IMG/VR virus record: IMGVR_UViG_3300033977_000108
Span: 62,001-126,000 of that record
Direction: 5' to 3' (one strand)
Length of the DNA: 64,000 nt
The notes under the pieces were generated by a model. That model was not told the origin of the DNA. It saw nothing but the letters and a program-made list of their open reading frames with translations, and did no database searches. The first letter of the stretch is position 1. Each line of letters starts with the position of its first letter. Below are positions 7,570 through 63,951 of this stretch, piece by piece. The translations under genes and the position numbers were made by a program.

Positions 7570-7585
7570 ACCTATACTAACCAGG
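7570..7585 (+). promoter_or_regulatory. Repeated intergenic motif ACCTATACTAACCAGG (copy 1), candidate phage late promoter
   Basis: 16/16 identical to 11024-11039; 12-nt core also at 33751-33762. Confidence 0.55.
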
Positions 7586-7639
7586 TGTGGATAGTAGTAT
7601 CGCCTGCGAGCGTATCCTATGAAGTTTAGACGAGGCCTT

Positions 7640-8104
7640 ATGCCTAACGGACATCACCCAGATTGCACTTCCCTGCACGTCAACTGGGCAGCCTGGCTTA
7701 CTATCATTACTGTTTTATGCGCCCTATTTGCTTTCGGCGGCTATCTCTTGTCTGACCGCACCAGCATTTCATCCAGCATTGTCAATCTCACCGACCGGGT
7801 GAGCACGCTGGAAAAGAAGATGGACAACTTTGAAGTCAGCCACAACACCATCGTGCTGCCTTCCTTGTCGCGCATCGAGCAGTCCCTGGAAGACATTGAC
7901 AAGCGGATAGACGACATTCAGCAGCAAGAGAGGGCTGACCATCCCAGACAAGCAAGGATGAGGCCCGTTAGTTCGCTGCTTTCCGCCGCCCCGCAAAGCC
8001 TGGCACAAGCCTATGACCCGCCAGCAGACAAGCCGAAAGCGGACAAGCCAGTGCCGAAGGCGCGACAGAAGCACATTATAAAAGTGGAGTTGCCGAAGTC
8101 ATAA
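7640..8104 (+). CDS. Single-TM membrane protein with coiled coil (holin/spanin-like architecture, function unknown)
   Basis: WAAWLTIITVLCALFAFGGYLL, then heptads and a Lys/Pro tail; GAGG RBS before ATG 7640. Confidence 0.55.
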   Translation: MPNGHHPDCTSLHVNWAAWLTIITVLCALFAFGGYLLSDRTSISSSIVNLTDRVSTLEKKMDNFEVSHNTIVLPSLSRIEQSLEDIDKRIDDIQQQERADHPRQARMRPVSSLLSAAPQSLAQAYDPPADKPKADKPVPKARQKHIIKVELPKS

Positions 8105-11023: not shown

Positions 11024-11039
11024 ACCTATACTAACCAGG
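11024..11039 (+). promoter_or_regulatory. Repeated intergenic motif ACCTATACTAACCAGG (copy 2)
   Basis: Identical to 7570-7585; directly upstream of the terminator-sheath-tube block. Confidence 0.55.
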
Positions 11040-11062
11040 AGGGAGAATAGATTGAGGTCTGT

Positions 11063-33747: not shown

Positions 33748-33762
33748 ACCATACTAACCAGG
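33748..33762 (+). promoter_or_regulatory. Repeated intergenic motif ACC-ATACTAACCAGG (copy 3)
   Basis: 12-nt core identical to copies 1 and 2; upstream of the baseplate block, merging into its RBS. Confidence 0.5.
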
Positions 33763-33770
33763 AGAGGAAG

Positions 33771-52950: not shown

Positions 52951-52967
52951 CCAAGTTGTGGAGGAAA

Positions 52968-53750
52968 ATGAAGCCCGTCATATATTCCGATTTCAATTGG
53001 CAGCCAAAATTGACGGATAGGGACGTTCAAATTGCCATTATGGTGGATTATCGCCCAGAACAAGATGCTTTTTGGGAGGCGCCCATTAGAATATTCGTCC
53101 AAGCCGAACCTCCATGTGTGCGTCCTGATGTACTTGCCCGTTTATCCAAAGAACAGAGTAGATTTACAGCCATTTTAGGTTGGCATTCTTCGCTTCGTGA
53201 CTGCCCGAATGCCAGCTATTTCAATCTCTGTACTGAGACACGTCTCGGAGAGAATTATCAGCCGCTTGCCGATAAAAAGTTTGGTGCTTCTTATTTAATT
53301 AGCACCAAAGCATGGTGCCCAGGCCACATATTCAGGCAAGCTGTCTTTGATGCTGTGGGAAGCTTTGATGGGTTTGAAATTGCCAAATTAAAGAATCTGC
53401 CTTCGCAATACATAGAAAAGGCAGATTTCATCGGCCATTACCAATTTGATATCTCTATTGAAAACGAATTCATCGAGAATTGGTTTACGGATAAGATAAT
53501 TGATGCCTGGGTGGCGAAGGTTGTGCCGATCTATTGTGGGTGCCCGAATCTCGCCGATTTTGGATTTGATACGAGCGGGGTCTTATATTTTTCCAGTATT
53601 GATGATCTAAAAGGGCTTTTGCAACGGATCACTCCGAATACCTATGCTAGCATGTCGGTTGCCATAGAGACCAATTATAACCTGGCGAAGAAATGGATTG
53701 ACCCTTGGCTGCTGGATAAAGAAATAACCAGGATACTGGAGGGAAATTGA
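52968..53750 (+). CDS. GT10 (alpha-1,3-fucosyltransferase-like) glycosyltransferase
   Basis: YQFDISIEN..WFTDKIIDAW..VPIYCG motif; GGAGG RBS. Confidence 0.85.
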   Translation: MKPVIYSDFNWQPKLTDRDVQIAIMVDYRPEQDAFWEAPIRIFVQAEPPCVRPDVLARLSKEQSRFTAILGWHSSLRDCPNASYFNLCTETRLGENYQPLADKKFGASYLISTKAWCPGHIFRQAVFDAVGSFDGFEIAKLKNLPSQYIEKADFIGHYQFDISIENEFIENWFTDKIIDAWVAKVVPIYCGCPNLADFGFDTSGVLYFSSIDDLKGLLQRITPNTYASMSVAIETNYNLAKKWIDPWLLDKEITRILEGN

Positions 53751-54448
53751 ATACATCTCCAGCGAAACCGACTAGGGTGCTCATAGCGATTACCAGCTGC
53801 GACAAAGAACCTTATCTATTTAGGCAGAAGCTTCAGCAAGAGACATGGATACCTATAGCCCAGCAGGCTGGTTATGCCGTTGAGTTCTTTACTGGCAAGC
53901 GTTTAGGTGTCTCGGATGACTATTTGAAACTGCCCCTCAAATTAAGGGCTATGTGCCGTTGGGCAACAGAGCAGAATTATGATTACATGCTCAAAGTAGA
54001 CGATGATACTTATGTGAATGTCGGGGGCTTGAGAATTATAAGGGCAGATTATGCTGGAGTTCCTATACCACCAAATGATTGTGGGGATTATAAGAATTCA
54101 GCTCCGGAACTTAAACCTGGGACTACGAAATATCCCTATTGTCCTGGAGGGGCGATCTGGTTATCAGCGAGAGCGATGAGGTTTATTGCGAATGCGCTGG
54201 TTGAGACGGATTGGGCTGATGATAGATGGGCAGGACAAGTGCTGGGGAAATATAACATAATTATCTGTTCTATGGCAGATAAGATGATTCTGGGTCCTGT
54301 TAATCATGGTATGTTCAACCCAGCAACTTTGCGGCCTCTATTGAAGAAAGAGATTGTAGCTGTTATGCAAGCCGGTGCAGGTGACAGAGGCAAAGACAAT
54401 TTTGTTCTATGCCAGAAATTCTTTGCTGGTGCTTATATATTGAGATGA
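53747..54448 (+). CDS. GT31 (galactosyltransferase/Fringe-like) glycosyltransferase
   Basis: QETW..L..K..YDYMLKVDDDTYV..GGAIWLS..DD. Confidence 0.8.
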   Translation: MNTSPAKPTRVLIAITSCDKEPYLFRQKLQQETWIPIAQQAGYAVEFFTGKRLGVSDDYLKLPLKLRAMCRWATEQNYDYMLKVDDDTYVNVGGLRIIRADYAGVPIPPNDCGDYKNSAPELKPGTTKYPYCPGGAIWLSARAMRFIANALVETDWADDRWAGQVLGKYNIIICSMADKMILGPVNHGMFNPATLRPLLKKEIVAVMQAGAGDRGKDNFVLCQKFFAGAYILR

Positions 54449-54825
54449 AACAAATTCCCAAAGCTTGGCGGCGGCACAACAGAAAGAGAAAGAAATCCAG
54501 TTATGAAGTCATTGTAGAATGCTGGCTAAAGGAACTGGGTGCTCATTATAAGCGGGAAGCGGCAATCGGCCATTGCCACGCTGACTTCCTGATTTATCCC
54601 AGGACACTCGTAGAAGTCAATGGATGCTACTGGCACAAGTGCCTAAAGTGCTTTCCAAAGCCGACTAAGAAGCAGGAAGCGCAGAGAATCAGAGATTTCT
54701 ACCGCTATCAGTTCTTCCAAAAGAAAGGCTATAGAGTAGTGGTTATACGAGGGCACGAGATAGATGAAGACCCATTGGGAGTAAAAGAACACATTAAGAA
54801 ATTGTGCTCGTCTTTGGATGAGTGA
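54445..54825 (+). CDS. Vsr/DUF559-like PD-(D/E)xK endonuclease
   Basis: ADF..VEVNGCYWH.C..RD..GYRVVVI..E; ATGA-coupled. Confidence 0.8.
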   Translation: MKQIPKAWRRHNRKRKKSSYEVIVECWLKELGAHYKREAAIGHCHADFLIYPRTLVEVNGCYWHKCLKCFPKPTKKQEAQRIRDFYRYQFFQKKGYRVVVIRGHEIDEDPLGVKEHIKKLCSSLDE

Positions 54826-54827
54826 TT

Positions 54828-55730
54828 ATGGCTTTCGCATCAGGAAATGTAGGACCTAACATTGGGGGCGGATTGCTTGCCGGGCAGAACGATGCTACAG
54901 GCGGGCAGAATTCAGCCCTTTGGGGCGTCCCAATTGCCGCCGCCGCTGGTGGACTGGGTTATTGGGCGTGGAAGCGCTACCCAAGAGAAACCGCACAAAT
55001 GCCTTTATTCCCAAGAGGCGAGCTGCCGGAACGCAGTATGTTAGGCGCCATGGGAAGAGATATAGACCGGGCCTGGGCGTATGTCGGCAGTCGTATGTCC
55101 AGGACTATCGGCGACTTACGCTATAATATGGGCCGGCACCCACAGCAACTGGAACTGCCTTTTGGTGCTGCTGCGGCACGCAATGCGCGCGGTGTAGGAA
55201 GTTGGATAGGAAGAGCCAAGGCATGGGGAGGGAATCTTCGCACAGGCGCGATATGGGGCGTACCCGATATTATGAGGGGACGGCCTATTCGCGGGCTCAG
55301 CCGTGTAGGCCGAGGTATAGGGTCTGGTTGGAAGATGGGTTTTGGTTCCGGCTGGGCGGGCTGGGGATTTGGATTAGTGGCTGGCGGGGTAGGTGCTGGT
55401 TTAGCACCTCGGGGTCATAGAGTAAGCACCTTTGCCGGCGCAACAATGGGCTGGATGCTAGGAGCGCTTATAGGCGGCGCCATTGCCGGTCCTGTGGGTG
55501 CCACTGTTGGTATGTTTGTTGGAACCACGGCGTTAGAAGGTGTAATAGCCAAGCCTATACAATTCCTGCACGATTATGCTACGATGACCAGACATTTGGG
55601 CATGGGTGGTTGGTATGAGGATACCTATCCGGCTTATACTATGCGACAGCGGGCAGTAAGAGAGATGTCGGCTAGCCTACTCAATGCCCGACAATATTTG
55701 GGCCGCGAAGCTCTCCTTTTACATCAATGA
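54828..55730 (+). CDS. Gly-rich membrane protein with glycine zippers
   Basis: GATMGWMLGALIGGAIAGPVGATVG; C-terminal TMRQRA..NARQYLGREA. Confidence 0.65.
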   Translation: MAFASGNVGPNIGGGLLAGQNDATGGQNSALWGVPIAAAAGGLGYWAWKRYPRETAQMPLFPRGELPERSMLGAMGRDIDRAWAYVGSRMSRTIGDLRYNMGRHPQQLELPFGAAAARNARGVGSWIGRAKAWGGNLRTGAIWGVPDIMRGRPIRGLSRVGRGIGSGWKMGFGSGWAGWGFGLVAGGVGAGLAPRGHRVSTFAGATMGWMLGALIGGAIAGPVGATVGMFVGTTALEGVIAKPIQFLHDYATMTRHLGMGGWYEDTYPAYTMRQRAVREMSASLLNARQYLGREALLLHQ

Positions 55731-55738
55731 GTTAGCAC

Positions 55739-55768
55739 TTGACAGCTTTGCGTAGTTTATAATACACT
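55739..55768 (+). promoter_or_regulatory. Sigma70-like promoter of the HNH gene
   Basis: TTGACA (55739)-18 nt-TACACT (55763); GGGAGG RBS follows. Confidence 0.5.
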
Positions 55769-55784
55769 AACATCGGGAGGAACT

Positions 55785-56519
55785 ATGGCAAAGCTAATAA
55801 ATTTGCTTGGGCAGCGTTTTGGCAGACTTGTTGTAGTAGAGCGGATGAGACAAAATAAGAGAGATAGGCCGGCATGGCGATGCTTGTGTGATTGTGGGGT
55901 TGAAACAATCATTGAAGGCGAAAATCTTAGATATGGCCATACAAAAAGCTGCGGTTGTTTAATACCAAATTTCATAGATCTGACTGGACAACGTTTTGGT
56001 AAATTGGTTGTTTTAGAGATGGCTGATAGGAACAAATTTCATCATATTCTATGGAAATGTAAATGTGATTGTGGAATGCTAAAATCTGTTTCTACGACCG
56101 TGCTAAGGAATGGAAAAACTATCAGTTGTGGCTGCGCTCATAAAGAAGCCATGGTTGCTCTTAGTAAGCAGTATCGTGAAGCTCATGGCTGTATTAGTGA
56201 AACCTATGAATATAAGATATGGCAATCGGCAAAACATAGGGCAAAGCGTGATAATCTACCGTTTAATATCTTGCCATCCGATATCATAATCCCTAAATTA
56301 TGCCCGGTTCTCGGTATTGAGTTGAAAAGGAATGGGCGAGAAGCAAAAGGTGATAGTCCATCTATGGATAAGATAATCCCACAACGAGGCTATGTTAAAG
56401 GAAATATCAGGATTATCAGCTTTAGAGCCAATTCTATAAAGAGGGACGCTACGGCTGAAGAGCTTAGAAAAGTGGCCGACGATGCAGCAAAACAGGAAGC
56501 TATGCTATTTCATCAATAG
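55785..56519 (+). CDS. Free-standing HNH-type homing endonuclease
   Basis: Two (N/D)L.GQRFG.LVV..W.C.CDCG..SCGC repeats; CPVLG..SMDKI..GYVKGNIRIISFRAN. Confidence 0.88.
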   Translation: MAKLINLLGQRFGRLVVVERMRQNKRDRPAWRCLCDCGVETIIEGENLRYGHTKSCGCLIPNFIDLTGQRFGKLVVLEMADRNKFHHILWKCKCDCGMLKSVSTTVLRNGKTISCGCAHKEAMVALSKQYREAHGCISETYEYKIWQSAKHRAKRDNLPFNILPSDIIIPKLCPVLGIELKRNGREAKGDSPSMDKIIPQRGYVKGNIRIISFRANSIKRDATAEELRKVADDAAKQEAMLFHQ

Positions 56520-56528
56520 GGAGTATCT

Positions 56529-56774
56529 ATGGCTGATATTACATATGGAGGGCTGGATTTAACGCTTTTAGAAGGACGTGTGAATCAATTAGATGGGGCG
56601 GGCCTGCCCGCTGGACAAACATCGGACATCGCCGCCTTACAAAAGCAAATCAATGGCCTGAAGACTACAATGAATAATCTTACCCTAACCTTTGAGCAGC
56701 AATTACAGGCTCTCACCAAACAGGTAGCCAATCTAACCATCCTAGTCAATACGATAACAGGAACCAACTCCTAG
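56529..56774 (+). CDS. Small coiled-coil protein
   Basis: GGGAG RBS; heptad pattern. Confidence 0.6.
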   Translation: MADITYGGLDLTLLEGRVNQLDGAGLPAGQTSDIAALQKQINGLKTTMNNLTLTFEQQLQALTKQVANLTILVNTITGTNS

Positions 56775-56956
56775 GGAATATACCGGTCCGTGGAAACAAA
56801 TAGGTGTATCTCCCAATCGTATGACTCATGCAAATGCGTAATGACTTTAGGCGGGTGCAGCCAATAAAGCAGCATGGTGCTCCAGGCAATCTTATCCCTC
56901 CTGTAGTTCTGTCCATAATCAAATAATCTGGGCTTATTGTCCGTGTTTTTAGGCAT
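56771..56956 (-). CDS. Hypothetical 61-aa protein
   Basis: TAATG-coupled to the GT gene; converges with the + strand gene at CTAG. Confidence 0.5.
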   Translation of the reverse strand: MPKNTDNKPRLFDYGQNYRRDKIAWSTMLLYWLHPPKVITHLHESYDWEIHLFVSTDRYIP

Positions 56957-58440
56957 TATTGTCTCTTCAAGATACCATTTTCAAAGTGTCGGGAGCGTCC
57001 TGGGATTAGAGGCGCTGCCGCTGCTGACTTCTGTACCGTTCGGCGCTGAATAGGCCTCTGGATAGGCCTCTGGTGCGGCAGAATTGGCTTCCTGACGGGG
57101 TTCGGGATACTGGTTAGGGTCTGAGGTATAGGCTTTTTATAGCTTTTACTCCTGGGTTTCTGCGTTTCGGTCCTATCTGTCCTGAAATCATAGATATACA
57201 GAGGTTCTTCTATCGTATAGCCGGTCTTCAAAACGCCGTCCTTTGTCATTAGATGCCAGCGTTCGGAGTCTTCACTCATGCTTTTGGCAGGAAATCTGTA
57301 CTGGCGGGCGATTGTGGCACGCGTAGGGCATAAATGATTGGGCTCGCGGATTTGAAATACATCGCTCAAGTCTGTATCTTGTTTGTATTCAATGGCAAAG
57401 CGGGAAATCCTGGGATGCTTCAAGTCCAACATAGTAAGTTGAAGGAAGCAGATGACGTCTACATCTTTCTCTGCGGCGGCCACCAGCTTGGCTACATAGT
57501 CGGCCGTAATCTTATCATCGTCATCAATGTAGCATAGATATTTCCCTCTGGCTATGTCCATCAATTCATTGCGTTTAGTACCTACATCCTTTTCCAGATT
57601 ATCAATGTTATACAGTATTTCAACATCGTCTGGGTTGGGCAAGTCAAACACCTGGGCGTATAACCCAGCCAATAAATCCACCAATAGCTGATGCCGGCTT
57701 TCAATCGAACAGATTAGAATGCTCAAAATAGGGTCTTTGATATCGAAGTTCTTAGCCCGCCGTTTGTTAAAAAGCTCTCCATCTACACCATAATAGGTCT
57801 CATTCCTTTGCATCAGCTCATCCCATTGGGCGCCGGTGAAAATCGGATGCAAATGCTTGACCAAGCACTTCCCTGAAGCCCTGCTCCATTCGGGTACCTC
57901 GGTGAATTTATGCAGCATTTTATGTACTTCACCATTCTCTGTGTCGCCGTATAAAGAAACATAGGCAGGAGAAAAGAAGTAGTTGAAACGACGATACAGA
58001 TTATAGCCGATAATGCAAAGGGTCGGCATGCTATCCGGCCGGAAGCCATCCCAATAGTATAAACTACCATCCAGCCCTGGATAATACTTATCCATGTCTG
58101 TCGCTATGATGTCGTCATAATCTTTTACCTGCGGCCACATATCGTCGGCGGCTACGATGGCAATGTCAAACCTGCGGCCGTGCATCCCTATATTGCAGGC
58201 CTCATGCTTGCAGCGGGCATGGACTATCATAAACTCTACATTGGCGCCATTGCTGGTGTATTTATGGCTGGTGCCCGCGCTAAAAAGATCCAAAGCGGTC
58301 TGTAAGGTTGGGTCATCATCATCAAGATTGACAAGGAAGTTCACATTATGCTTGCCAGAGAGCAGGGAAATCCAAGTGTCCAAACATTCCTTGAATTGTG
58401 TCGGGCGGGAGCGGGTTGGGAATTTGATTAGTATTTCCAT
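56956..58440 (-). CDS. Tandem GT2-like glycosyltransferase with basic tail
   Basis: ILIKFPTRSRP..AADDM; ILSILICS..KRNEL..GKYLCYIDDDD..SED. Confidence 0.85.
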   Translation of the reverse strand: MEILIKFPTRSRPTQFKECLDTWISLLSGKHNVNFLVNLDDDDPTLQTALDLFSAGTSHKYTSNGANVEFMIVHARCKHEACNIGMHGRRFDIAIVAADDMWPQVKDYDDIIATDMDKYYPGLDGSLYYWDGFRPDSMPTLCIIGYNLYRRFNYFFSPAYVSLYGDTENGEVHKMLHKFTEVPEWSRASGKCLVKHLHPIFTGAQWDELMQRNETYYGVDGELFNKRRAKNFDIKDPILSILICSIESRHQLLVDLLAGLYAQVFDLPNPDDVEILYNIDNLEKDVGTKRNELMDIARGKYLCYIDDDDKITADYVAKLVAAAEKDVDVICFLQLTMLDLKHPRISRFAIEYKQDTDLSDVFQIREPNHLCPTRATIARQYRFPAKSMSEDSERWHLMTKDGVLKTGYTIEEPLYIYDFRTDRTETQKPRSKSYKKPIPQTLTSIPNPVRKPILPHQRPIQRPIQRRTVQKSAAAAPLIPGRSRHFENGILKRQ

Positions 58441-59840
58441 CAGATTGATGTATAGAACTCGTGCATCTTCTCGGGCGTCACATAATGCGTGCTGATGATG
58501 TCATTATCCTTCGTGGGGTAGGCATCAGAAATAGAAGACTGATAGCGCGTATCCCAGTGTAAGAAAATCTTGTGCTGTGCCAATAGGCGGCTGACTGCTG
58601 TGTCTTCTGGTTGCAGACCGCCTTCAAAGATTGTAAACTCTTCCAAGGAATGGGATAGAATGGCTTTCATTGCTGCCCGGCTTAGCCAATAACCAGCGCC
58701 GCCGGAAGCAAATGGCACATCGCCGGACCTGTGCTCCGCATTTAGTTCCCGCCCTACATAGTCATAACAAACATAATCCGAATACAAAAGCCTATCGGGC
58801 ACTGCATAGGTGTCGGTGTCGCATTTGAAAAGATAGGTATAGCCTTGTTTATAGGCCCAATCAATCAGAGCATAAACCTTGTGGCATAGATGGTCATAAT
58901 CGCCAGGCACATCCAGGTATACTTCATTCGGCTTTGTTGTTGGCTGGTCGCCGGCCCCAAAGAAGAAGCGTACATCTACATTGGGAAGATTGCCTAACCA
59001 GGTTTCCTGTTGGGCCTTCTGAGATTCCCTGTTCTTATCACAGGCTGGGACAGCGACTAATATCTTTTCATCAGGCACTGCCAGTTTATACCAGCGGTCG
59101 GGTATAATGTCTTTGGCGTCGATGTCTTTGATTGCAAACCATTTATCTGGGGCTATGCGCAACCCAGTGTATTGGGATAGCCACGAGCCCCACCAAGAAT
59201 AGCTACTATTTGTGATAATCGCATGGCGGCATAAAGTCATCAATCGCAGATGCACGTATTTATCCCCGGGGACTACTACCCCGTCAAACTGGGACAATCC
59301 ATTCCAACCTGGTTCATCGGTGAAGATGTAGAACTTGGGATTCTGCACTTTCTGCTGAATCAGACTACACGCCGCGCGATACCAAGACAAAGGCATCAAT
59401 CCATGGATTTTCATCACATCGCTTCGTAGATAATCACCCCGGCGGATAGATACAGCTACGGATTCGCTATTGCTTATCTCTTTGGCCAGGTCAGGTGGCC
59501 TTATCTGATAACGAAAAGCAAGGTGCCGCCTGATAACGGGTTCTATCGCCGCAAAATACTTCTCGGATTGCCAATAACCATCAAAGCAATTATTGTCCCC
59601 TGCTTCAAGAAATGAGGGATTGAATGTAAAAGCATCCTCTGTTTTCGTGATGGGGATAGCATGGCTTATAGTGGAAGCCTTGATCATGAAATGCTGGAGA
59701 TCGTATGTTCTGCCAGAACTATCAGGATAGGTAGAAGTATCTAATAGCAAAGATGTTTTATACCGCTGGGCAAGAGCGGTGCCAAAGGCGTACTGGAACA
59801 TCTGATTCCCGAGACCACCTCTGAGTTTTATAGTAATCAT
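58440..59840 (-). CDS. GT11 (alpha-1,2-fucosyltransferase-like) fused to a GT31-like domain
   Basis: GGLGNQMFQYA, GYWQSEKYF, IRRGDY, NSSYSWW; then FKCDTDTY..SGGAGYWLS..ED. Confidence 0.9.
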   Translation of the reverse strand: MITIKLRGGLGNQMFQYAFGTALAQRYKTSLLLDTSTYPDSSGRTYDLQHFMIKASTISHAIPITKTEDAFTFNPSFLEAGDNNCFDGYWQSEKYFAAIEPVIRRHLAFRYQIRPPDLAKEISNSESVAVSIRRGDYLRSDVMKIHGLMPLSWYRAACSLIQQKVQNPKFYIFTDEPGWNGLSQFDGVVVPGDKYVHLRLMTLCRHAIITNSSYSWWGSWLSQYTGLRIAPDKWFAIKDIDAKDIIPDRWYKLAVPDEKILVAVPACDKNRESQKAQQETWLGNLPNVDVRFFFGAGDQPTTKPNEVYLDVPGDYDHLCHKVYALIDWAYKQGYTYLFKCDTDTYAVPDRLLYSDYVCYDYVGRELNAEHRSGDVPFASGGAGYWLSRAAMKAILSHSLEEFTIFEGGLQPEDTAVSRLLAQHKIFLHWDTRYQSSISDAYPTKDNDIISTHYVTPEKMHEFYTSI

Positions 59841-60571
59841 GTCCTTTTTAGCACGCCATTCTCAAAATGCCTGGAGCCGTGAGAAGTGGGGACTATGTTC
59901 TTTGGCGTGGGCGTTGGCTTACGAATAACCTGGCGTCTAGGCAGGATTGGTTTTGTGGCGGGGGCTGTGATTGGGTTCTTGGCATGAGTTTCCGTACCCT
60001 TGAAGCGGAAATCATAAAGGTAGATGGGCACAGGAATGGTAGTGCAGGTTCTTATGTGCTGGAATACTTCCATAGCCCATGCGCTATCTTCCCCATAGGA
60101 AATCTCTGGGAACTTGTGGGCTTTGGCGTGGGCGGCTAAAATAGGACAGACATGGTAGGGAGGTTTATTATACACACCTTCAATGGTAGGGCTCTCCTTG
60201 CCATAATCCATTGAATGCCTAAACATCTTAGGGTTTCTTAAGTCCCAAGTAATAATGCCGGTAATGCCTACAGCGTCAGGGGATGTTTTTACGGCGTCCA
60301 GGATGCGGGCTACATAATCGCCGGCAACTCGGTCATCGTCATCAACAAAGACCACATACTTGCCGCGGGCCATCTCAAGGAGTTTATTGCGCTTGGCGCC
60401 TACGGTAATCTCTTTATTATCAACCAGATAGATGATTTCTACTGATTCAGGATTGGGCAGGTATTTAATCTGGGCGTATAAGGATGCAAGCAATCCCTGG
60501 AGCAATTCTTTCCTGGCTTCCAGCGAACAAATGAGAATACTTAAAATAAGAGATTGTTCGGTCTCCGGCAT
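59837..60571 (-). CDS. GT2 glycosyltransferase with basic tail
   Basis: ILSILICS..GAKRN..GKYVVFVDDDD..GED; paralogue of the C-domain of 56956..58440. Confidence 0.85.
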   Translation of the reverse strand: MPETEQSLILSILICSLEARKELLQGLLASLYAQIKYLPNPESVEIIYLVDNKEITVGAKRNKLLEMARGKYVVFVDDDDRVAGDYVARILDAVKTSPDAVGITGIITWDLRNPKMFRHSMDYGKESPTIEGVYNKPPYHVCPILAAHAKAHKFPEISYGEDSAWAMEVFQHIRTCTTIPVPIYLYDFRFKGTETHAKNPITAPATKPILPRRQVIRKPTPTPKNIVPTSHGSRHFENGVLKRT

Positions 60572-61677
60572 TAAGTTGCATCCTCATCGCGGGCCCTCAT
60601 GATAGCTCGTATTCCATCTCTCAATTCAATGGTGCGTTGGTCTGTGGCGCCAATCAGTTGCCATAATCCCTGATGGTCGCGTTTCAAATCGTGGGCCGGG
60701 TCAAAGCGAATTCTGTCAAGGAAAGACCAGCGAGTAGCATAGCCTCTCTTGTTCTTTGATCCGTGATAGAAGTGGAACACATGGCCGGGCATAAAGCCTA
60801 CATTCTTCTTTATGTGGTCGGCGCATAGCTTGGCCCAATTTCGCACCATGCTATTATAGATAGTCAGGTGGTCTGTATGCTCGGCTATTGAGGATTCAAC
60901 ATGGCCTATAAGAGCCGTAGCCATATGCCAATCGGCAGATCCCATTATAGCCCAGTCAATCAGCATACCAACTTTGGCTAAGGAACTCCTACGCCAAGCC
61001 CAAGCCAACCCAGGCTGCCCCCAGAAGCCTTTTGCATAACCACCAGGGCCATAGGCAGCCTTGAATGGGATGGGGTCATGCCCGCCAGGCCTATGAGGCT
61101 CATTCTGCTTTGCAAACCATTCGGCTATAAAGCCTGGAAACATCAGCGTATCACGCGCGAACAGGTTCTTATCCCTTTGTCTCACGCCCATGGGCTCATA
61201 GTTGGCATTCAAGTCTTGTACTGTGCTGAACATCTGTATGACATCATAATGTTGCAGCAGATGTAGTGTTTCTTGTGCCCAGTCCTGGCGCGCGAACATA
61301 GCGTCGGCGTCAATAAAGGCTATGTATTGAGCCTCCGCCGGCAATCGCTGAACCATTAGATTCTGGGCGTTTTCTTTATACCAGAGCTCATCATGGGAGC
61401 GCAGCTGCAAATGGTGCGGATTGTCAGGCTGCGTTACTTCAAACTGGCGGCCACCAAAAGCTACCTCGGCGGTATATAAAACGGCACCGCCTGCCTCGAT
61501 TTGGCGTTCAAAATTATGATAGTTCTGATAACGAGAACGCCAACGGAGAGGATTGCTCACCATGGTGACAACATAAAGTTTGTCTGGGAAAGGGTGTATA
61601 CCGGGTTTGGCATGTGCAGGATGCTCAATATATGCCCCGGAACCCTCTGGAAAGTGTTTCAGGGGATGGGCATTCAT
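60571..61677 (-). CDS. GT-A-fold glycosyltransferase-like protein
   Basis: WYKENAQN..IAFIDAD..G.AWA..GSAD..HFYHG. Confidence 0.6.
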   Translation of the reverse strand: MNAHPLKHFPEGSGAYIEHPAHAKPGIHPFPDKLYVVTMVSNPLRWRSRYQNYHNFERQIEAGGAVLYTAEVAFGGRQFEVTQPDNPHHLQLRSHDELWYKENAQNLMVQRLPAEAQYIAFIDADAMFARQDWAQETLHLLQHYDVIQMFSTVQDLNANYEPMGVRQRDKNLFARDTLMFPGFIAEWFAKQNEPHRPGGHDPIPFKAAYGPGGYAKGFWGQPGLAWAWRRSSLAKVGMLIDWAIMGSADWHMATALIGHVESSIAEHTDHLTIYNSMVRNWAKLCADHIKKNVGFMPGHVFHFYHGSKNKRGYATRWSFLDRIRFDPAHDLKRDHQGLWQLIGATDQRTIELRDGIRAIMRARDEDAT

Positions 61678-61697: not shown

Positions 61698-62501
61698 CTA
61701 TGCTGTAACTAAACTGACATCTGCTTCCAATTGCGCCAGGTCCAGTCCTGTAGGAGTTACTCCGCTCTTGGTGAACCAATCGGGAGTAATCAGAACATAA
61801 GCTTCGTCAAAATAATGATGGAGGAATGGCCAAGTCAACCCAAGCGTCTCGCCCCAAGTAACGCAGGTAAGACCTTGTACGCCGACACCATTGTTCTTTA
61901 GTAACGCGCGGATGGTATATTGTCCGATTGGTATGCAATGTCCGCCCCAACTGCCAGGAGCTGCGTTTGGATCGCTTCCAACCGGCGTATCAGCGTCCCA
62001 CCAGAGAGGAGGCGTGGCATCTGTCTGATTCTGCGCGGTTATTGGAAGATTGACGCCACAATAAATTCCACCGAACAAATCAGTGGCGATTTCTACTTCC
62101 TTTTCACTCTTTAGATTGACCGCGGCATAAGCTTCTAGTTTTATGCCGGCGATAGGATTATTTCTCCACCAGTTCAGCAGGTCTAAAATGACCAAGCCAT
62201 CGTCATTTGGGCTCAATTCCTTGTAAATACTGACTATCTGATCTTCGGTCGGGGTCACAGGACTGCCACAGGCCGTTGTCCAAAGCTGAATCATGTGGCC
62301 AATAGCCGCCAAAGTACAATCACCCAGCGTATCGTTGCCGTACATGGGCCAGCTGCTTACTTTGGTTAGCCAATCTATTGAAGACGCTGGCAAGGTCACC
62401 TGTGCTTTGGCAGGCTTTATCAGTTTGGTGATATACTTGCTCAATTGCAGAGTGCGAGGGTCTATCTTCGCGGGTTTCTTACCGAGCTTACGATTAGGCA
62501 T
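61698..62501 (-). CDS. Papain-like (C1-related) cysteine peptidase
   Basis: ND..GDCTLAA (Cys), GGHC (His), VTWG; AAGGAG RBS. Confidence 0.75.
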   Translation of the reverse strand: MPNRKLGKKPAKIDPRTLQLSKYITKLIKPAKAQVTLPASSIDWLTKVSSWPMYGNDTLGDCTLAAIGHMIQLWTTACGSPVTPTEDQIVSIYKELSPNDDGLVILDLLNWWRNNPIAGIKLEAYAAVNLKSEKEVEIATDLFGGIYCGVNLPITAQNQTDATPPLWWDADTPVGSDPNAAPGSWGGHCIPIGQYTIRALLKNNGVGVQGLTCVTWGETLGLTWPFLHHYFDEAYVLITPDWFTKSGVTPTGLDLAQLEADVSLVTA

Positions 62502-62520: not shown

Positions 62521-62597
62521 TGGTGGCGGGGACTGGATTTGAACCAGTGATTTCTTGATTATGAGCCAAGCGAGATACCAGACTTCTCTACCCCGCT
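62521..62597 (-). tRNA. tRNA-Met(CAT), initiator-like, CCA encoded
   Basis: AGCGGGG-TA-GAGA..TCTC-G-CTTGG-CTCATAA-TCAAG..ACTGG-TTCAAAT-CCAGT-CCCCGCC-ACCA; 77 nt. Confidence 0.93.
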
Positions 62598-62602
62598 AAA
62601 AC

Positions 62603-62755
62603 TTATTTACCTTGAAACGGAGACTGGGTGGTTCTATACGGCTTCTTGCCGCCGGCTTTGAATACACCAATCTTACCTGGGCCATCACTCTTGCCTGGGG
62701 ATGGATTCTTTACAGGATTAGGGCCTTTGGCTGCCCCGGATGCTCTTGCGCCCAT
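62603..62755 (-). CDS. Basic microprotein E (50 aa)
   Basis: MGARASGAAKGPNPVKNPSPGKSDGPGKIGVFKAGGKKPYRTTQSPFQGK; AAAGGT RBS. Confidence 0.8.
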   Translation of the reverse strand: MGARASGAAKGPNPVKNPSPGKSDGPGKIGVFKAGGKKPYRTTQSPFQGK

Positions 62756-62756
62756 G

Positions 62757-62885
62757 TTATTTACCTTTCTTTTGATAAGGTGGCTGTGTGGTACAGTAGG
62801 GCTTTTTGCCCCCGCCCTTGAACACACCTACCTTGCCAGGCCCGTCGGACTTACCTGGGCTGGGATTTTTATAGGGATTGGCCAT
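62757..62885 (-). CDS. Basic microprotein D (42 aa; not in the ORF track)
   Basis: MANPYKNPSPGKSDGPGKVGVFKGGGKKPYCTTQPPYQKKGK; AAGGAGG RBS. Confidence 0.85.
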   Translation of the reverse strand: MANPYKNPSPGKSDGPGKVGVFKGGGKKPYCTTQPPYQKKGK

Positions 62886-62896
62886 TGGAGGCCTCC

Positions 62897-63052
62897 TTAC
62901 TTGGATTTCTTCTGGAAAGGCGGAGCAGCGCCTTTGAACGCAGGCTTCTTCTCGCCTTTGCCGCCGGCCTTGAACTTGCCCACCTTGCCAGAGCCTGTGG
63001 TTTTCTTCACGGGCTTTTTCTTATCGAACTCGGATGGATTGAACATATCCAT
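62897..63052 (-). CDS. Basic microprotein C (51 aa; not in the ORF track)
   Basis: MDMFNPSEFDKKKPVKKTTGSGKVGKFKAGGKGEKKPAFKGAAPPFQKKSK; AAGGAG RBS. Confidence 0.8.
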   Translation of the reverse strand: MDMFNPSEFDKKKPVKKTTGSGKVGKFKAGGKGEKKPAFKGAAPPFQKKSK

Positions 63053-63072
63053 TTAGGTTCTCCTTGTTGCGT

Positions 63073-63276
63073 TTATTTGCCCTTGCCGGACTTCGTGAAG
63101 GCGCCGCGAGGCTTGAATGCCTTGGCGGGAGCCTGATTAACCGGAGGTGGCAGAGCATGCGGATCCGTGCCATGGTGTCTTCTTCCTGGCCCTGTAGCAG
63201 TTGGGTTCATGAAACTACCGACTTTCCCTGGACCATCACTTTTACCCGGGCTTGGATTCTTATAAGGATTAGACAT
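63073..63276 (-). CDS. Basic microprotein B (67 aa)
   Basis: MSNPYKNPSPGKSDGPGKVGSFM..DPHALP; AAGGAG RBS. Confidence 0.85.
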   Translation of the reverse strand: MSNPYKNPSPGKSDGPGKVGSFMNPTATGPGRRHHGTDPHALPPPVNQAPAKAFKPRGAFTKSGKGK

Positions 63277-63769
63277 GTTCGTCTCCTTTATTTTCGTATT
63301 GTTTTAGGTATTCAATCATACCTGATAATTTTCGTATGCTACTGCTGAATAGACCTTCTCCGCAGTTGCAACTAAAGCAAAGAATACCACGTATTCTGCC
63401 TGTTGCATGATCATGATCTGTTTGCCAGCCTTTTGGCCCTGGATCTGTAGTTAGACAGCCTGGATTGGCACAGCGTCTGCCTTGTCTTTCAAACAAGGCC
63501 TCCCACATTTCCTCAGATATACCATATTTCTTCTTTAACATATATCTTCGTTGTATGGAAGCATAGCCTGGCTTTCCTTTCTTTCTTTGCGCATGTATCC
63601 TATCATACGCTTTTGCTTTGTCTGGATTTTTCTTCTCCCATGACTTCTTTTGTTCGTTGCTGCATTTCTTACACCAGCATTTCAGCCCATCTGGTTTCCT
63701 TTTGTCCTTATAAAACGGACCAGGACCGCCACATTTAGGACAAATCTTCGTCTTGATGGGTTCTATCAC
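63269..63769 (-). CDS. Endonuclease VII-like homing endonuclease
   Basis: CPKC..CKKC; KKYGIS..Q..RCA..DHDHATGRIRGILCFSCN. Confidence 0.88.
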   Translation of the reverse strand: MIEPIKTKICPKCGGPGPFYKDKRKPDGLKCWCKKCSNEQKKSWEKKNPDKAKAYDRIHAQRKKGKPGYASIQRRYMLKKKYGISEEMWEALFERQGRRCANPGCLTTDPGPKGWQTDHDHATGRIRGILCFSCNCGEGLFSSSIRKLSGMIEYLKQYENKGDEHV

Positions 63770-63951
63770 TAGTTTATCTTTTTCCCAGTTCTTTGTGGCA
63801 TTGCATGAGGATCTCCAGACGGATAAGAATGTCTCAAACCAGGACCTTCTTTCCTTACCTTGCCAGGATTAGGGCCTTTCATGAACGTACCGATGTGCCC
63901 AGAGCCCTCGCCCTTGCCAGATGGCTGGGGATTCTTGTATGGATTCGGCAT
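63769..63951 (-). CDS. Basic microprotein A (60 aa)
   Basis: MPNPYKNPQPSGKGEGSGHIGTFM..DPHAMP; GAGG RBS before ATG 63951. Confidence 0.8.
   Translation of the reverse strand: MPNPYKNPQPSGKGEGSGHIGTFMKGPNPGKVRKEGPGLRHSYPSGDPHAMPQRTGKKIN

What the first reader, a model, noticed from the sequence alone, without database searches (positions are those of the whole stretch)
62603..63951. Tandem array of five paralogous Lys/Gly/Pro microproteins (NPYKNPSPGKSDGPGKVGxF)
Seen: five 42-67-aa ORFs, each with an RBS; two are missing from the ORF track. B, D and E share KNPSPGKSDGPGK exactly, with synonymous codon differences indicating protein-level selection. A and B share DPHA(M/L)P; C, D and E share FK.GGK..P..Q.K. 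An endonuclease VII gene splits A from B, and the array may continue past the window. I recognise no family. Hypotheses: histone-tail/SPKK-like DNA-condensing core proteins, modified-peptide precursors, or decoys for host defence sensors.
Basis: partly seen in the sequence, partly recalled or inferred. Interest (0 to 1): 0.8.

Follow-up and report, generated by a model that had tools for sequence, protein, structure and literature searches.

The report
Five conserved cationic phage microproteins
An uncultured 205-kb peat phage carries a row of five small, strongly positively charged, unstructured proteins that are real, tightly conserved genes with no relatives outside a handful of sister phages; they appear to be switched on with the virus-particle genes, and their function is still unknown.

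Summary
Five minus-strand ORFs of 42-67 aa share an N-terminal motif, NPYKNP(S/Q)P..GK..G.GK(V/I)G.F. An endonuclease VII-type gene sits between A and B. The array has exactly five copies and does not continue past the window.

They are genuine coding genes. Four sister-phage contigs keep the order A-B-C-D-E. Differences fall 123/77/403 on codon positions 1/2/3. Synonymous sites are saturated (pS 0.66-0.86) against pN 0.07-0.18. Amino-acid identity is 72-95%, against 35-75% for flanking genes.

The family is confined to this small clade of peat phages. No Pfam, PHROG, NCBIfam or PDB match was found, and an exhaustive HMM search of 1.84 billion proteins returned only orthologues.

The proteins are disordered polycations (pI 10-10.8, net +7 to +11).

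New here: their transcription unit is headed by the same 16-mer (CTATACTAACCAGGAG) that precedes the head, sheath and baseplate gene blocks. In a sister phage the array lies collinear with the structural arm. A papain-fold protease and a glycosyltransferase cluster follow the array.

Best guess, at low confidence: late-made nucleic-acid-binding core or counter-ion proteins that dock through the shared motif. This is analogous to phiX174 J and the T4 internal proteins, not homologous to them.

The parts
63769..63951 (-). Microprotein A (60 aa, net +7). N-terminal motif NPYKNPQPSGKGEGSGHIGTF, a second degenerate NP..GPG unit, and DPHAMP.
   Evidence: Orthologues of 82-87% amino-acid identity occur in L002, L005 and L007, with differences mostly at codon position 3. 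The ATG lies about 12 nt after the stop of the upstream 127-aa ORF.
63269..63769 (-). Free-standing endonuclease VII / HNH-type gene (166 aa, zinc-ribbon N-terminus) inserted between A and B. Probably a homing-endonuclease-like mobile gene.
   Evidence: PF02945 E 7.9e-19 and phrog_2633 E 4e-27. It is absent from the A|B spacer of L002, L005 and L007. There is a single copy in the genome.
63073..63276 (-). Microprotein B (67 aa, net +9). Motif NPYKNPSPGKSDGPGKVGSF, then GPGRRHHGTDPHALPPP and a basic tail.
   Evidence: AAGGAG ribosome-binding site. Orthologues are 80-89% identical. AF2 with the family alignment gives pLDDT 61.5, pTM 0.15 and no secondary structure.
62897..63052 (-). Microprotein C (51 aa, net +11, 15 Lys). 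The most divergent N-terminus; keeps GSGKVGKFKAGGK and PPFQKKSK.
   Evidence: AAGGAG ribosome-binding site. Orthologues are 72-76% identical.
62757..62885 (-). Microprotein D (42 aa, net +8). The minimal form: motif plus FKGGGKKPYCTTQPPYQKKGK.
   Evidence: TAAGGAGG ribosome-binding site. 95% amino-acid identity to the L002 orthologue at only 77% nucleotide identity, with pS 0.81 and pN 0.07.
62603..62755 (-). Microprotein E (50 aa, net +9). An 11-residue N-terminal extension MGARASGAAKG precedes the motif. The ATG lies 1 nt after D's stop.
   Evidence: The extension is conserved in L002, L004 and L006. In low-depth relatives in the source run, 6 of 7 variant positions fall on codon position 3.
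62521..62597 (-). tRNA-Met (CAT), 5 nt downstream of E's stop on the same strand.
   Evidence: ARAGORN. The same E-then-tRNA-Met arrangement occurs in L006. Its anticodon stem lacks the three G-C pairs typical of initiator tRNA (read; the rule itself is from general knowledge).
61698..62501 (-). 267-aa papain-fold cysteine protease (PHROG 19005, previously of unknown function). It is the next gene in the same operon.
   Evidence: AF2 pLDDT 82.9, pTM 0.85. Foldseek finds xylellain 3ois at E 3.4e-8 and TM 0.62, followed by cathepsins. Cys62 and His188 are invariant in 25 homologues.
56956..61677 (-). Glycosyltransferase cluster at the end of the same leftward unit: 368-aa GT-like, 244-aa GT2, 466-aa GT11, 494-aa GT2.
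   Evidence: The cluster is syntenic in L002 and L004.
11026..11041 (+). Copy of the 16-mer CTATACTAACCAGGAG, upstream of a virion structural protein and the tail sheath. The same motif heads the array's transcription unit at genome 127613 and 127751 on the minus strand, which is about 1.6 kb beyond the window end. Further window copies lie at 7572-7587 and 33749-33764.
   Evidence: The window has 3 matches, against 0.03 expected from shuffles. The following genes were annotated.

Best explanation
The five genes encode late-expressed, intrinsically disordered polycations.

Shown: they are coding, strongly constrained and disordered, and they sit in a unit headed by the promoter-like motif of the morphogenesis genes.

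Inferred: each protein uses the shared ~20-residue, turn-rich N-terminal motif (NPYKNP..GK..G.GK(V/I)G.F) to dock onto one common structured partner. The Lys/Gly/Pro tails, which differ between paralogues, bind nucleic acid electrostatically. The most likely role is as DNA-associated core or counter-ion proteins made alongside the virion proteins and probably packaged with the 205-kb genome. By analogy this resembles phiX174 J, the adenovirus core peptides and the T4 internal proteins. The five paralogues are not redundant, because each has kept its own identity since before the sister phages diverged.
For: Coding and constraint:
- Codon-position differences are 123/77/403. pS is 0.66-0.86 against pN 0.07-0.18.
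- The microproteins are 72-95% identical to their orthologues, while neighbouring enzymes are 35-75% identical.

Physical nature:
- pI 10.0-10.8, net charge +7 to +11, 45-57% Lys+Gly+Pro.
- No predicted secondary structure: AF2 pTM 0.15 and Atlas pLDDT 0.22.

High translation signals: TAAGGAGG for D and AAGGAG for B and C.

Late co-regulation:
- The 16-mer CTATACTAACCAGGAG (up to 2 mismatches) occurs 9 times in the genome.
- Seven copies precede the terminase, head/MCP, sheath and baseplate blocks.
- The only two minus-strand copies head the unit that runs into the array.
- The motif core is conserved at the equivalent place in L002, although synonymous sites are saturated between the two phages.
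- In L002 the array module is collinear with the end of the structural arm.
- No terminator-like site lies on the coding strand across the array.

Analogy, not evidence: in T4 the internal-protein genes ipI, ipII and ipIII flank the tRNA cluster and the segB homing endonuclease next to baseplate genes. phiX174 J, annotated 'DNA condensation, core protein', is a 38-aa Lys/Arg/Gly/Pro peptide.
Against: - There is no expression, proteomic or binding data. No RNA run could be listed.
- The promoter role of the 16-mer is inferred from position and conservation only.
- The array lies on the strand and arm that also carries replication and recombination genes.
- The N-terminal motif occurs in no other protein of the genome, so it is not a general capsid-targeting tag.
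- A bulk counter-ion role would not by itself explain five distinct, individually conserved paralogues or a precisely conserved motif.
- Viral DNA condensers are more often Arg-rich (general knowledge).
- There is no homology to J (hhalign probability 0.1) or to any internal-protein PHROG.
Confidence: 0.33

Rival explanations
1. Intracellular, non-virion effectors. The shared motif would be a short linear motif that docks all five proteins onto one host or phage hub, such as the ribosome, RNA polymerase, nucleoid or replication machinery. The different tails would tune the effect: host shut-off, nucleoid remodelling, or formation of a nucleic-acid coacervate as a replication or assembly compartment.
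For: - A precisely conserved ~20-residue motif in otherwise disordered proteins is typical of a docking motif.
- Five individually conserved paralogues argue for specific rather than bulk roles.
- The array is on the same strand as the primase/helicase, RuvC-like resolvase and methyltransferase genes.
- tRNA genes are interleaved with the array.
Against: - The late-type motif and the collinearity with the structural arm in L002 point to late rather than early takeover timing.
- No partner was identified.
- Nothing distinguishes this reading from the virion-core reading except location, which is untested.
Confidence: 0.25
2. Leader-core peptides. The conserved N-terminal 20-25 residues would act as a leader that the adjacent papain-fold protease removes, for example after FK(A/G)GG in C, D and E. 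The released Pro/Tyr/Lys-rich 14-20-mers might be glycosylated on the TT pair by the downstream glycosyltransferases. They could act like proline-rich antimicrobial peptides or glycopeptide bacteriocins.
For: - The pattern of a conserved N-terminus and divergent C-terminus across paralogues.
- A papain-fold Cys protease and four or five glycosyltransferases in the same operon, in both phage lineages.
- The GG pair after the motif in C, D and E.
- The resemblance of the tails to O-glycosylated Pro-rich insect peptides is from memory only, so it is a lead and not a test.
Against: - No YcaO, radical-SAM, lanthipeptide or C39/ABC-export genes lie within about 15 kb.
- A and B lack the GG.
- The leader is basic and Gly/Pro-rich, unlike double-glycine leaders (general knowledge).
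- The protease family occurs in many temperate phages without any such microproteins.
- The tails are also conserved between orthologues, so they are not hypervariable cores.
Confidence: 0.08
3. Lysis accessories: polycations released at lysis that destabilise the outer membrane, comparable to the phiKT gp28 'disruptin'.
For: - Cationic small peptides that are apparently late-expressed.
- The unit begins with a 94-aa protein with an N-terminal transmembrane segment and a coiled coil, which has a weak Rz-like PHROG hit (E 0.002).
- The neighbouring protease family sits in glucosaminidase/holin-like/lipoprotein cassettes in temperate phages.
- The precedent for a phage cationic lysis peptide is bioRxiv 10.1101/515445.
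Against: - gp28 is an amphipathic helix that partitions into membrane. A-E have no predicted helix and very low hydrophobicity, with GRAVY -1.0 to -1.4.
- The phage's likelier lysis genes lie about 68 kb away, in the plus-strand arm: an SLT-domain 186-aa protein followed by an Rz-like 251-aa protein.
Confidence: 0.06
4. Not genes at all: a DNA-level repeat or chance ORFs in G+C-rich, codon-biased sequence. The long antisense ORF at 62628-63056 (+) might then be the real gene.
For: - A 142-aa ORF lies antisense to C, D and E.
- Two of the five ORFs were reportedly missed by the first stage's gene track.
Against: - Third-position-biased divergence in the minus-strand frames (123/77/403).
- pN far below pS.
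- ORF boundaries and ribosome-binding sites are conserved in four other contigs.
- The antisense ORF is broken into 83-, 61- and 41-aa pieces in L002.
- Nucleotide identity between paralogue motifs is low while the peptide is identical.
Confidence: 0.01

Closest known systems
Microviridae protein J (phiX174 gene J; 'DNA condensation, core protein')
   Same: A very small (38 aa), Lys/Arg/Gly/Pro-rich, unstructured polycation with a few aromatic residues. It is made with the structural proteins. Its role in neutralising and tethering packaged DNA is from general knowledge.
   Different: - No sequence relationship: hhalign probability 0.1 and no Pfam hit.
- J is single-copy in a 5.4-kb ssDNA phage.
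- Here there are five distinct paralogues in a 205-kb tailed dsDNA phage, Lys-rich rather than Arg-rich, with the conserved motif at the N-terminus.
T4 internal proteins IPI, IPII, IPIII
   Same: - Several small basic proteins are encoded near tRNA genes and a homing endonuclease, beside the baseplate genes of a contractile-tailed phage.
- From general knowledge: the paralogue-like set shares an N-terminal targeting sequence and has divergent bodies, and is packaged and injected with the DNA.
   Different: - No PHROG or Pfam similarity.
- The T4 proteins are larger (95-193 aa) and folded.
- The T4 targeting sequence is a short amphipathic segment cut by the prohead protease. No such cleavage motif or protease link is shown here.
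Protamine-like / core peptides of eukaryotic dsDNA viruses (e.g. adenovirus VII and mu)
   Same: - Small basic proteins under 15 kDa that condense genomes for encapsidation. PMC6163548 states this as the general rule for eukaryotic dsDNA viruses.
- From general knowledge: in adenovirus a papain-like cysteine protease processes the core proteins.
   Different: - Those proteins are Arg-rich and come from eukaryotic viruses.
- No homology was found.
- A link between the neighbouring papain-fold protease and A-E is conjecture.
phiKT gp28 'disruptin'
   Same: A phage-encoded cationic peptide of 56 aa that is an orphan in sequence.
   Different: - gp28 is an amphipathic helix that associates with membrane.
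- A-E are Gly/Pro-rich, non-helical and very hydrophilic.
- A-E are not in the phage's likely lysis cassette.
SPKK / AT-hook minor-groove motifs of histone tails and HMGA
   Same: Repeated turn-forming Pro/Gly-Lys units (SPGK, GPGK, GPGRR, NPGK) in a disordered basic chain.
   Different: No literal S/T-P-K/R-K/R motif or R-G-R-P core is present (read). The Pfam AT_hook model does not match.

Membership tests
Any curated protein family (Pfam-A, PHROGs v4, NCBIfam, PDB sequences) | Significant profile or sequence match | tested here: not met
   - No family at E<=1 in Pfam or PHROGs for any of the five.
- No NCBIfam family at E<=10 for 13 members.
- The best PDB profile hit has E 0.11, to a GFP-like fragment, which is noise.
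Microviridae J protein | Sequence homology to J (Pfam Microvir_J) | tested here: not met
   hhalign of the family profile against phiX174 J gives probability 0.1. There is no Pfam hit.
Microviridae J protein | Small, highly basic, unstructured peptide | tested here: met
   42-67 aa, pI 10-10.8, net +7 to +11. No predicted secondary structure.
Microviridae J protein | Packaged with the genome, with one end anchored to the coat protein | not testable with these tools
   This needs virion proteomics or cryo-EM.
T4-type internal proteins | Several proteins share an N-terminal targeting segment and have divergent bodies | tested here: inconclusive
   A shared N-terminal motif with divergent tails is present. 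However, the motif is found in no other protein of the genome, and a targeting function is not shown.
T4-type internal proteins | Homology to IPI/IPII/IPIII families | tested here: not met
   No PHROG hit.
T4-type internal proteins | Late expression with head genes | tested here: inconclusive
   The array's unit shares the 16-mer found upstream of the head, sheath and baseplate blocks. No transcript data exist.
Disruptin (phiKT gp28-like lysis peptide) | Cationic amphipathic helix | tested here: not met
   The proteins are cationic, but no helix is predicted and GRAVY is -1.0 to -1.4. gp28's features are taken.
Disruptin (phiKT gp28-like lysis peptide) | Encoded in the lysis cassette | tested here: not met
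   The SLT endolysin-like and Rz-like genes lie at genome 56.5-57.8 kb, about 68 kb from the array.
RiPP precursor peptides | Conserved leader with variable core | tested here: inconclusive
   The N-terminus is more conserved than the tails among paralogues. The tails are nevertheless conserved between orthologues.
RiPP precursor peptides | Adjacent maturase or exporter (YcaO, radical SAM, LanB/C/M, C39-ABC) | tested here: not met
   None was found among the neighbours scanned. Only a C1-like papain-fold protease and glycosyltransferases are present.
SPKK / AT-hook DNA-binding motifs | S/T-P-K/R-K/R or R-G-R-P core | tested here: not met
   Neither core occurs in the 13 aligned sequences.

The most novel reading that the evidence does not exclude
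The array is a phage-encoded set of leader-plus-core peptides. The conserved N-terminal motif would be a recognition leader for the neighbouring papain-fold protease and/or the glycosyltransferases. The released Pro/Tyr/Lys-rich cores, possibly O-glycosylated on the conserved TT, would be bioactive peptides that target the ribosome or the envelope of the host or of competing bacteria. That would be a new, phage-borne class of ribosomally made modified peptides.
Probability: 0.07. Interest if true: 0.9.

Novelty: new variant of a known kind. Interest (0 to 1): 0.55.

Why it matters
Tailed phages are generally thought to pack DNA without dedicated small condensing proteins, T4's internal proteins being the classic exception. 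A conserved, multi-paralogue set of protamine-like or J-like microproteins in a 205-kb phage would therefore be significant. If they are shown to be virion-associated, they would give a new handle on how very large phage genomes are neutralised, organised and delivered.

Independently of function, this is a clean example of microprotein genes that gene callers miss, yet that are among the best-conserved genes of their genome. Each of their intergenic spacers is occupied, in one sister lineage or another, by a tRNA, a homing-type endonuclease or a small extra ORF.

The work also yields two by-products: a candidate late-promoter motif for this uncultured phage clade, and a fold assignment (papain-like protease) for the widespread PHROG 19005.

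Tried and rejected
Searches for relatives that found nothing new:
- Pattern-based scans of IMG/VR, JGI metagenome contigs and GTDB genomes with the family alignment. Each gave 55-78 pattern matches, none confirmed by tblastn.
- tblastn of B against 50,697 GenBank phages: no match.
- ESM Atlas: feature hits at 0.8 or below, which is noise level, and structure hits that are meaningless for a disordered model.
- Word-index search with the upstream 153-aa protein, to find more distant sister phages: only the genome's own protein.
- Sheath protein against IMG/VR: nothing. Against GenBank phages: only a 26% match to Moorella phage MTATph1. So no cultured relative exists.
- Literature search for the motif strings: no relevant paper.

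Expression and assembly:
- No RNA run could be listed. The only holder is the source peat DNA run.
- Laying its contigs on the region (1,601 bases, within the operators' limit) confirmed the assembly and showed low-depth relatives.

Ideas rejected:
- The array continuing beyond the window.
- The antisense 142-aa ORF being the real gene.
- Recent gene conversion as the cause of the identical B/D/E peptide. Synonymous sites between these paralogues are near saturation.
- A sigma-70 promoter directly upstream of A. The only hit overlaps the start codon.
- The array lying inside the lysis cassette.
Full report
**What is there**

The window is bases 62001-126000 of a 204,633-bp IMG/VR virus record with direct terminal repeats. 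It is a contractile-tailed phage. It encodes a tail sheath, a baseplate wedge protein and tail fibres, a large terminase, a portal and a virion structural protein, and a major head protein.

On the minus strand at 62603-63951 lie five short ORFs:

| ORF | Coordinates | Length |
|---|---|---|
| A | 63769-63951 | 60 aa |
| B | 63073-63276 | 67 aa |
| C | 62897-63052 | 51 aa |
| D | 62757-62885 | 42 aa |
| E | 62603-62755 | 50 aa |

A 166-aa endonuclease VII-type gene lies between A and B (PF02945, E 7.9e-19). A tRNA-Met(CAT) begins 5 nt after E's stop.

The alignment shows a shared N-terminal block, M-x-NPYKNP(S/Q)P(S)GK(S/G)(D/E)G(P/S)G(K/H)(V/I)G-x-(F/Y). It is followed by Lys/Gly/Pro tails that differ between paralogues.
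- B, D and E share KNPSPGKSDGPGK exactly.
- A and B share DPHA(M/L)P.
- C, D and E share FK.GGK.

A six-frame motif search of the whole genome finds only these five copies. The ORFs just beyond the window are unrelated, so the array does not continue.

**They are real genes under strong purifying selection**

A word-index search of 5.8 billion proteins with the family profile returned seven proteins, several of them the window's own. The others led to metagenome contigs of sister phages:
- L002 (13.6 kb) and L006, from one ENA assembly.
- L003, L004 and L007, from one JGI sample.
- L005, from a second JGI sample.

The window's own source run is a peat metagenome.

Every contig long enough carries the same genes in the same order, A-B-C-D-E.

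Between the window and L002:
- Amino-acid identity is 72-95%, while nucleotide identity is only 70-77%.
- pS is 0.66-0.86, which is saturated.
- pN is 0.07-0.18.

Over 14 orthologous pairs, differences fall 123/77/403 on codon positions 1/2/3. In low-depth relatives within the source run, 6 of 7 variant sites in E are third positions.

Flanking genes of the same two phages are only 35-75% identical. The microproteins are therefore among the best-conserved genes in the region.

Between paralogues the identical peptide is encoded by very different codons (motif pS 0.60-0.94). The identity is thus held by selection, not by recent gene conversion.

The 142-aa antisense ORF (62628-63056, plus strand) is a by-product of the GGN/CCN/AAR codon composition. 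It is fragmented in L002.

**No known family; a narrow clade**

- Pfam, PHROGs, NCBIfam and PDB sequence profiles give nothing.
- An exhaustive HMMER search of 1.84 billion cluster representatives with a 13-sequence profile found only orthologues, plus one weak hit in a 1167-aa repeat protein.
- DNA-level pattern scans of IMG/VR, JGI metagenomes and GTDB genomes confirmed no further locus.
- GenBank phages have no match, and the phage has no cultured relative.

**Physical nature**

All five are polycations: pI 10.0-10.8, net charge +7 to +11, 45-57% Lys+Gly+Pro, GRAVY -1.0 to -1.4. AlphaFold2 with the family alignment gives pLDDT 61.5, pTM 0.15 and no secondary structure. The Atlas model has pLDDT 0.22.

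A few aromatic residues are conserved at intervals (Y5, F22 and PY/PF near the C-terminus). A and B contain a second, degenerate NP..GPG(K/R) unit.

**Locus architecture and plasticity**

The coding order is fixed, but nearly every spacer is occupied by something different in some lineage:

| Position | Insert | Where seen |
|---|---|---|
| Upstream of A | 127-aa ORF | window |
| A\|B | endonuclease VII gene | window |
| A\|B | 43-aa Cys-rich ORF | L002, L007 |
| A\|B | nothing | L005 |
| C\|D | 68-aa ORF | L002, L004 |
| D\|E | tRNA-Ile(GAT) | L007 |
| D\|E | tRNA-like remnant | L002 |
| After E | tRNA-Met | window, L006 |
| After E | 103-aa ORF with an HNH-like Cys/His pattern (no family match) | L002, L004 |

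Free-standing homing-type endonucleases typically lodge next to conserved genes (general knowledge). That fits the constraint measured here.

The motif exists in two forms, SPGKSDG and QP(S/A)GKGDG. These are distributed mosaically among paralogues and lineages (output), which suggests occasional exchange between copies.

**Expression context (new)**

The genome has a long plus-strand morphogenesis arm, about 33.6-118.5 kb. Most of the rest is minus-strand.

A k-mer screen of intergenic regions found the 16-mer CTATACTAACCAGGAG. Allowing up to 2 mismatches it occurs 9 times, always co-oriented with the local genes.

Seven copies are on the plus strand:
- At the start of the arm.
- Before the terminase block.
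- In the 3' end of the portal gene, ahead of the 764-aa, 401-aa and major head protein genes.
- Before the virion structural protein and sheath.
- Before the baseplate block.

The only two minus-strand copies are at genome 127751 and 127613. They head this unit: 94-aa (transmembrane segment plus coiled coil) - 98-aa - 153-aa (signal peptide, Trp-rich) - 127-aa - A - endonuclease - B - C - D - E - tRNA-Met - 267-aa - glycosyltransferases.

Supporting points:
- In the window the motif is found 3 times, against 0.03 expected.
- Its core is exactly conserved in L002 upstream of the homologous unit, although synonymous sites are saturated between the two phages.
- In L002 the whole module is inverted relative to this genome, so it continues the structural arm on the same strand.
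- No terminator-like site lies on the coding strand across the array.
- D carries TAAGGAGG and B and C carry AAGGAG. Only 3 of 223 long ORFs have an 8-nt core, and 29 of 223 have a core of 6 nt or more.

I read this as late, strong expression together with the virion genes. That the motif is a promoter is an inference.

**Neighbours**

Upstream on the same strand lie a primase/helicase, an N6-methyltransferase, a RuvC-like resolvase, a metallophosphoesterase, and SLOG and JAB proteins.

The 267-aa protein downstream (PHROG 19005, 'unknown function') folds as a papain-like cysteine protease:
- AF2 pLDDT 82.9, pTM 0.85.
- Foldseek finds xylellain at E 3.4e-8 and TM 0.62, then cathepsins.
- Cys62 and His188 are invariant.

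The word-index search found 282 homologues at E <= 1e-5 in metagenomes and MAGs. In three temperate-phage-like contigs the gene sits between a glucosaminidase, a holin-like gene and a lipoprotein gene on one side and the terminase on the other. None of those contigs has K/G/P microproteins.

This phage's likelier lysis genes are far away in the plus-strand arm, at genome 56.5-57.8 kb: an SLT-domain 186-aa protein followed by an Rz-like 251-aa protein.

Four or five glycosyltransferases, including GT2 and GT11 types, end the unit.

**Interpretation**

Shown: coding, constrained, clade-restricted, disordered, polycationic, and in a unit marked by the morphogenesis-arm motif.

Inferred: late high expression, a shared docking motif plus nucleic-acid-binding tails, and a role as DNA-associated core or counter-ion proteins.

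The closest analogues are phiX174 J, the T4 internal proteins and the protamine-like core proteins of eukaryotic dsDNA viruses.
- phiX174 J was retrieved and compared, and no homology was found.
- The T4 internal-protein genes also lie among tRNA genes and a homing endonuclease beside baseplate genes.
- The general rule for protamine-like core proteins is stated in PMC6163548.

Against a purely bulk role stand the five individually conserved paralogues and the exact motif, which point to a specific partner. For that reason I rate a non-virion docking-motif effector almost as likely.

A leader-core or modified-peptide reading survives weakly, because of the protease and the glycosyltransferases. 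A disruptin-like lysis role is unlikely, since there is no amphipathic helix and the array is not in the lysis cassette.

**Verdict**

This is a genuine, previously undescribed, lineage-restricted family of five paralogous cationic microproteins. Function is unproven. Interest is moderate to high because of the unusual conservation, the multi-paralogue design and the testable link to genome packaging in large phages.

Noticed in passing
window 7572-7587, 11026-11041, 33749-33764 (+). Outside the window at genome 33641, 34089, 40279, 49456 (+) and 127613, 127751 (-).: The 16-mer CTATACTAACCAGGAG (up to 2 mismatches) occurs 9 times, always co-oriented with genes. It marks the head, tail and baseplate blocks and the array's unit. 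It is a candidate late promoter for this phage clade, and it contains a TATACT -10-like hexamer. Its core is conserved in sister contig L002 at 2786-2798.
   Followed up: partly
window 61698-62501 (-): The 267-aa protein of PHROG 19005 ('unknown function') is predicted with good confidence to have a papain/cathepsin-like cysteine protease fold, with invariant Cys62 and His188. The word-index search found 282 homologues at E <= 1e-5 in metagenomes and MAGs. In temperate-phage contigs L012-L014 it lies between glucosaminidase, holin-like and lipoprotein genes and the terminase.
   Followed up: partly
L007 1282-1360; L002 about 7990-8065; L006 284-360: tRNA genes are interleaved with the array in sister phages. 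tRNA-Ile(GAT) lies between D and E in L007. A tRNA-like sequence that ARAGORN does not call lies at the same place in L002. tRNA-Met follows E in L006, as in the window.
   Followed up: partly
L002 7099-7230 and L007 611-742: A conserved 43-aa Cys-rich ORF (C..C..C..C..C pattern) occupies the A|B spacer where the window has the endonuclease VII gene. L005 has only 12 nt there.
   Followed up: no
L002 7636-7842 and 8240-8551; window 55785-56519 (+): Further small inserts near or in the array. L002 and L004 carry a 68-aa ORF between C and D, and a 103-aa ORF with an HNH-like Cys/His pattern (no Pfam hit) after E. A second HNH/endonuclease VII-type gene (244 aa, phrog_374, E 2.6e-42) lies at the end of the window's structural arm.
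   Followed up: no
L008 1278-1562 (-), i.e. genome 127277-127561: The first gene of the array's transcription unit is a 94-aa protein with an N-terminal transmembrane segment and a long coiled coil. It has a weak Rz-like spanin hit (phrog_1327, E 0.002).
   Followed up: partly
L001 3369-3830 (-), i.e. genome 126471-126932; L002 6411-6896; L005 360-836: A 153-161-aa protein with a signal peptide, a Gly/Arg-rich linker and a Trp/Tyr/Phe-rich C-terminal domain lies just upstream of A. It immediately precedes A in L002, L003, L005 and L007; in the window a 127-aa ORF intervenes. No family match.
   Followed up: no
window 52956-56774 versus L002 454-2776: The array/glycosyltransferase module is inverted relative to the end of the structural arm between this genome and L002. 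The two parts converge here and are collinear in L002.
   Followed up: partly
window 62628-63056 (+): A 142-aa ORF runs antisense to C, D and E. It is a by-product of the Gly/Pro/Lys codon composition, is not conserved (fragmented in L002), and could mislead gene callers.
   Followed up: yes
alignment of orthologues (output): Two versions of the motif core exist: SPGKSDG, and the one-residue-longer QP(S/A)GKGDG. They are distributed mosaically. B is SP-type in the window and L005 but QP-type in L002 and L007. D is QP-type only in L007. This suggests occasional exchange between paralogues.
   Followed up: no
L016 7515-8834, i.e. genome 56515-57834 (+): The probable lysis genes of the phage lie in the structural arm: an SLT-domain 186-aa endolysin-like protein directly followed by a 251-aa protein with a weak Rz-like spanin hit.
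   Followed up: no
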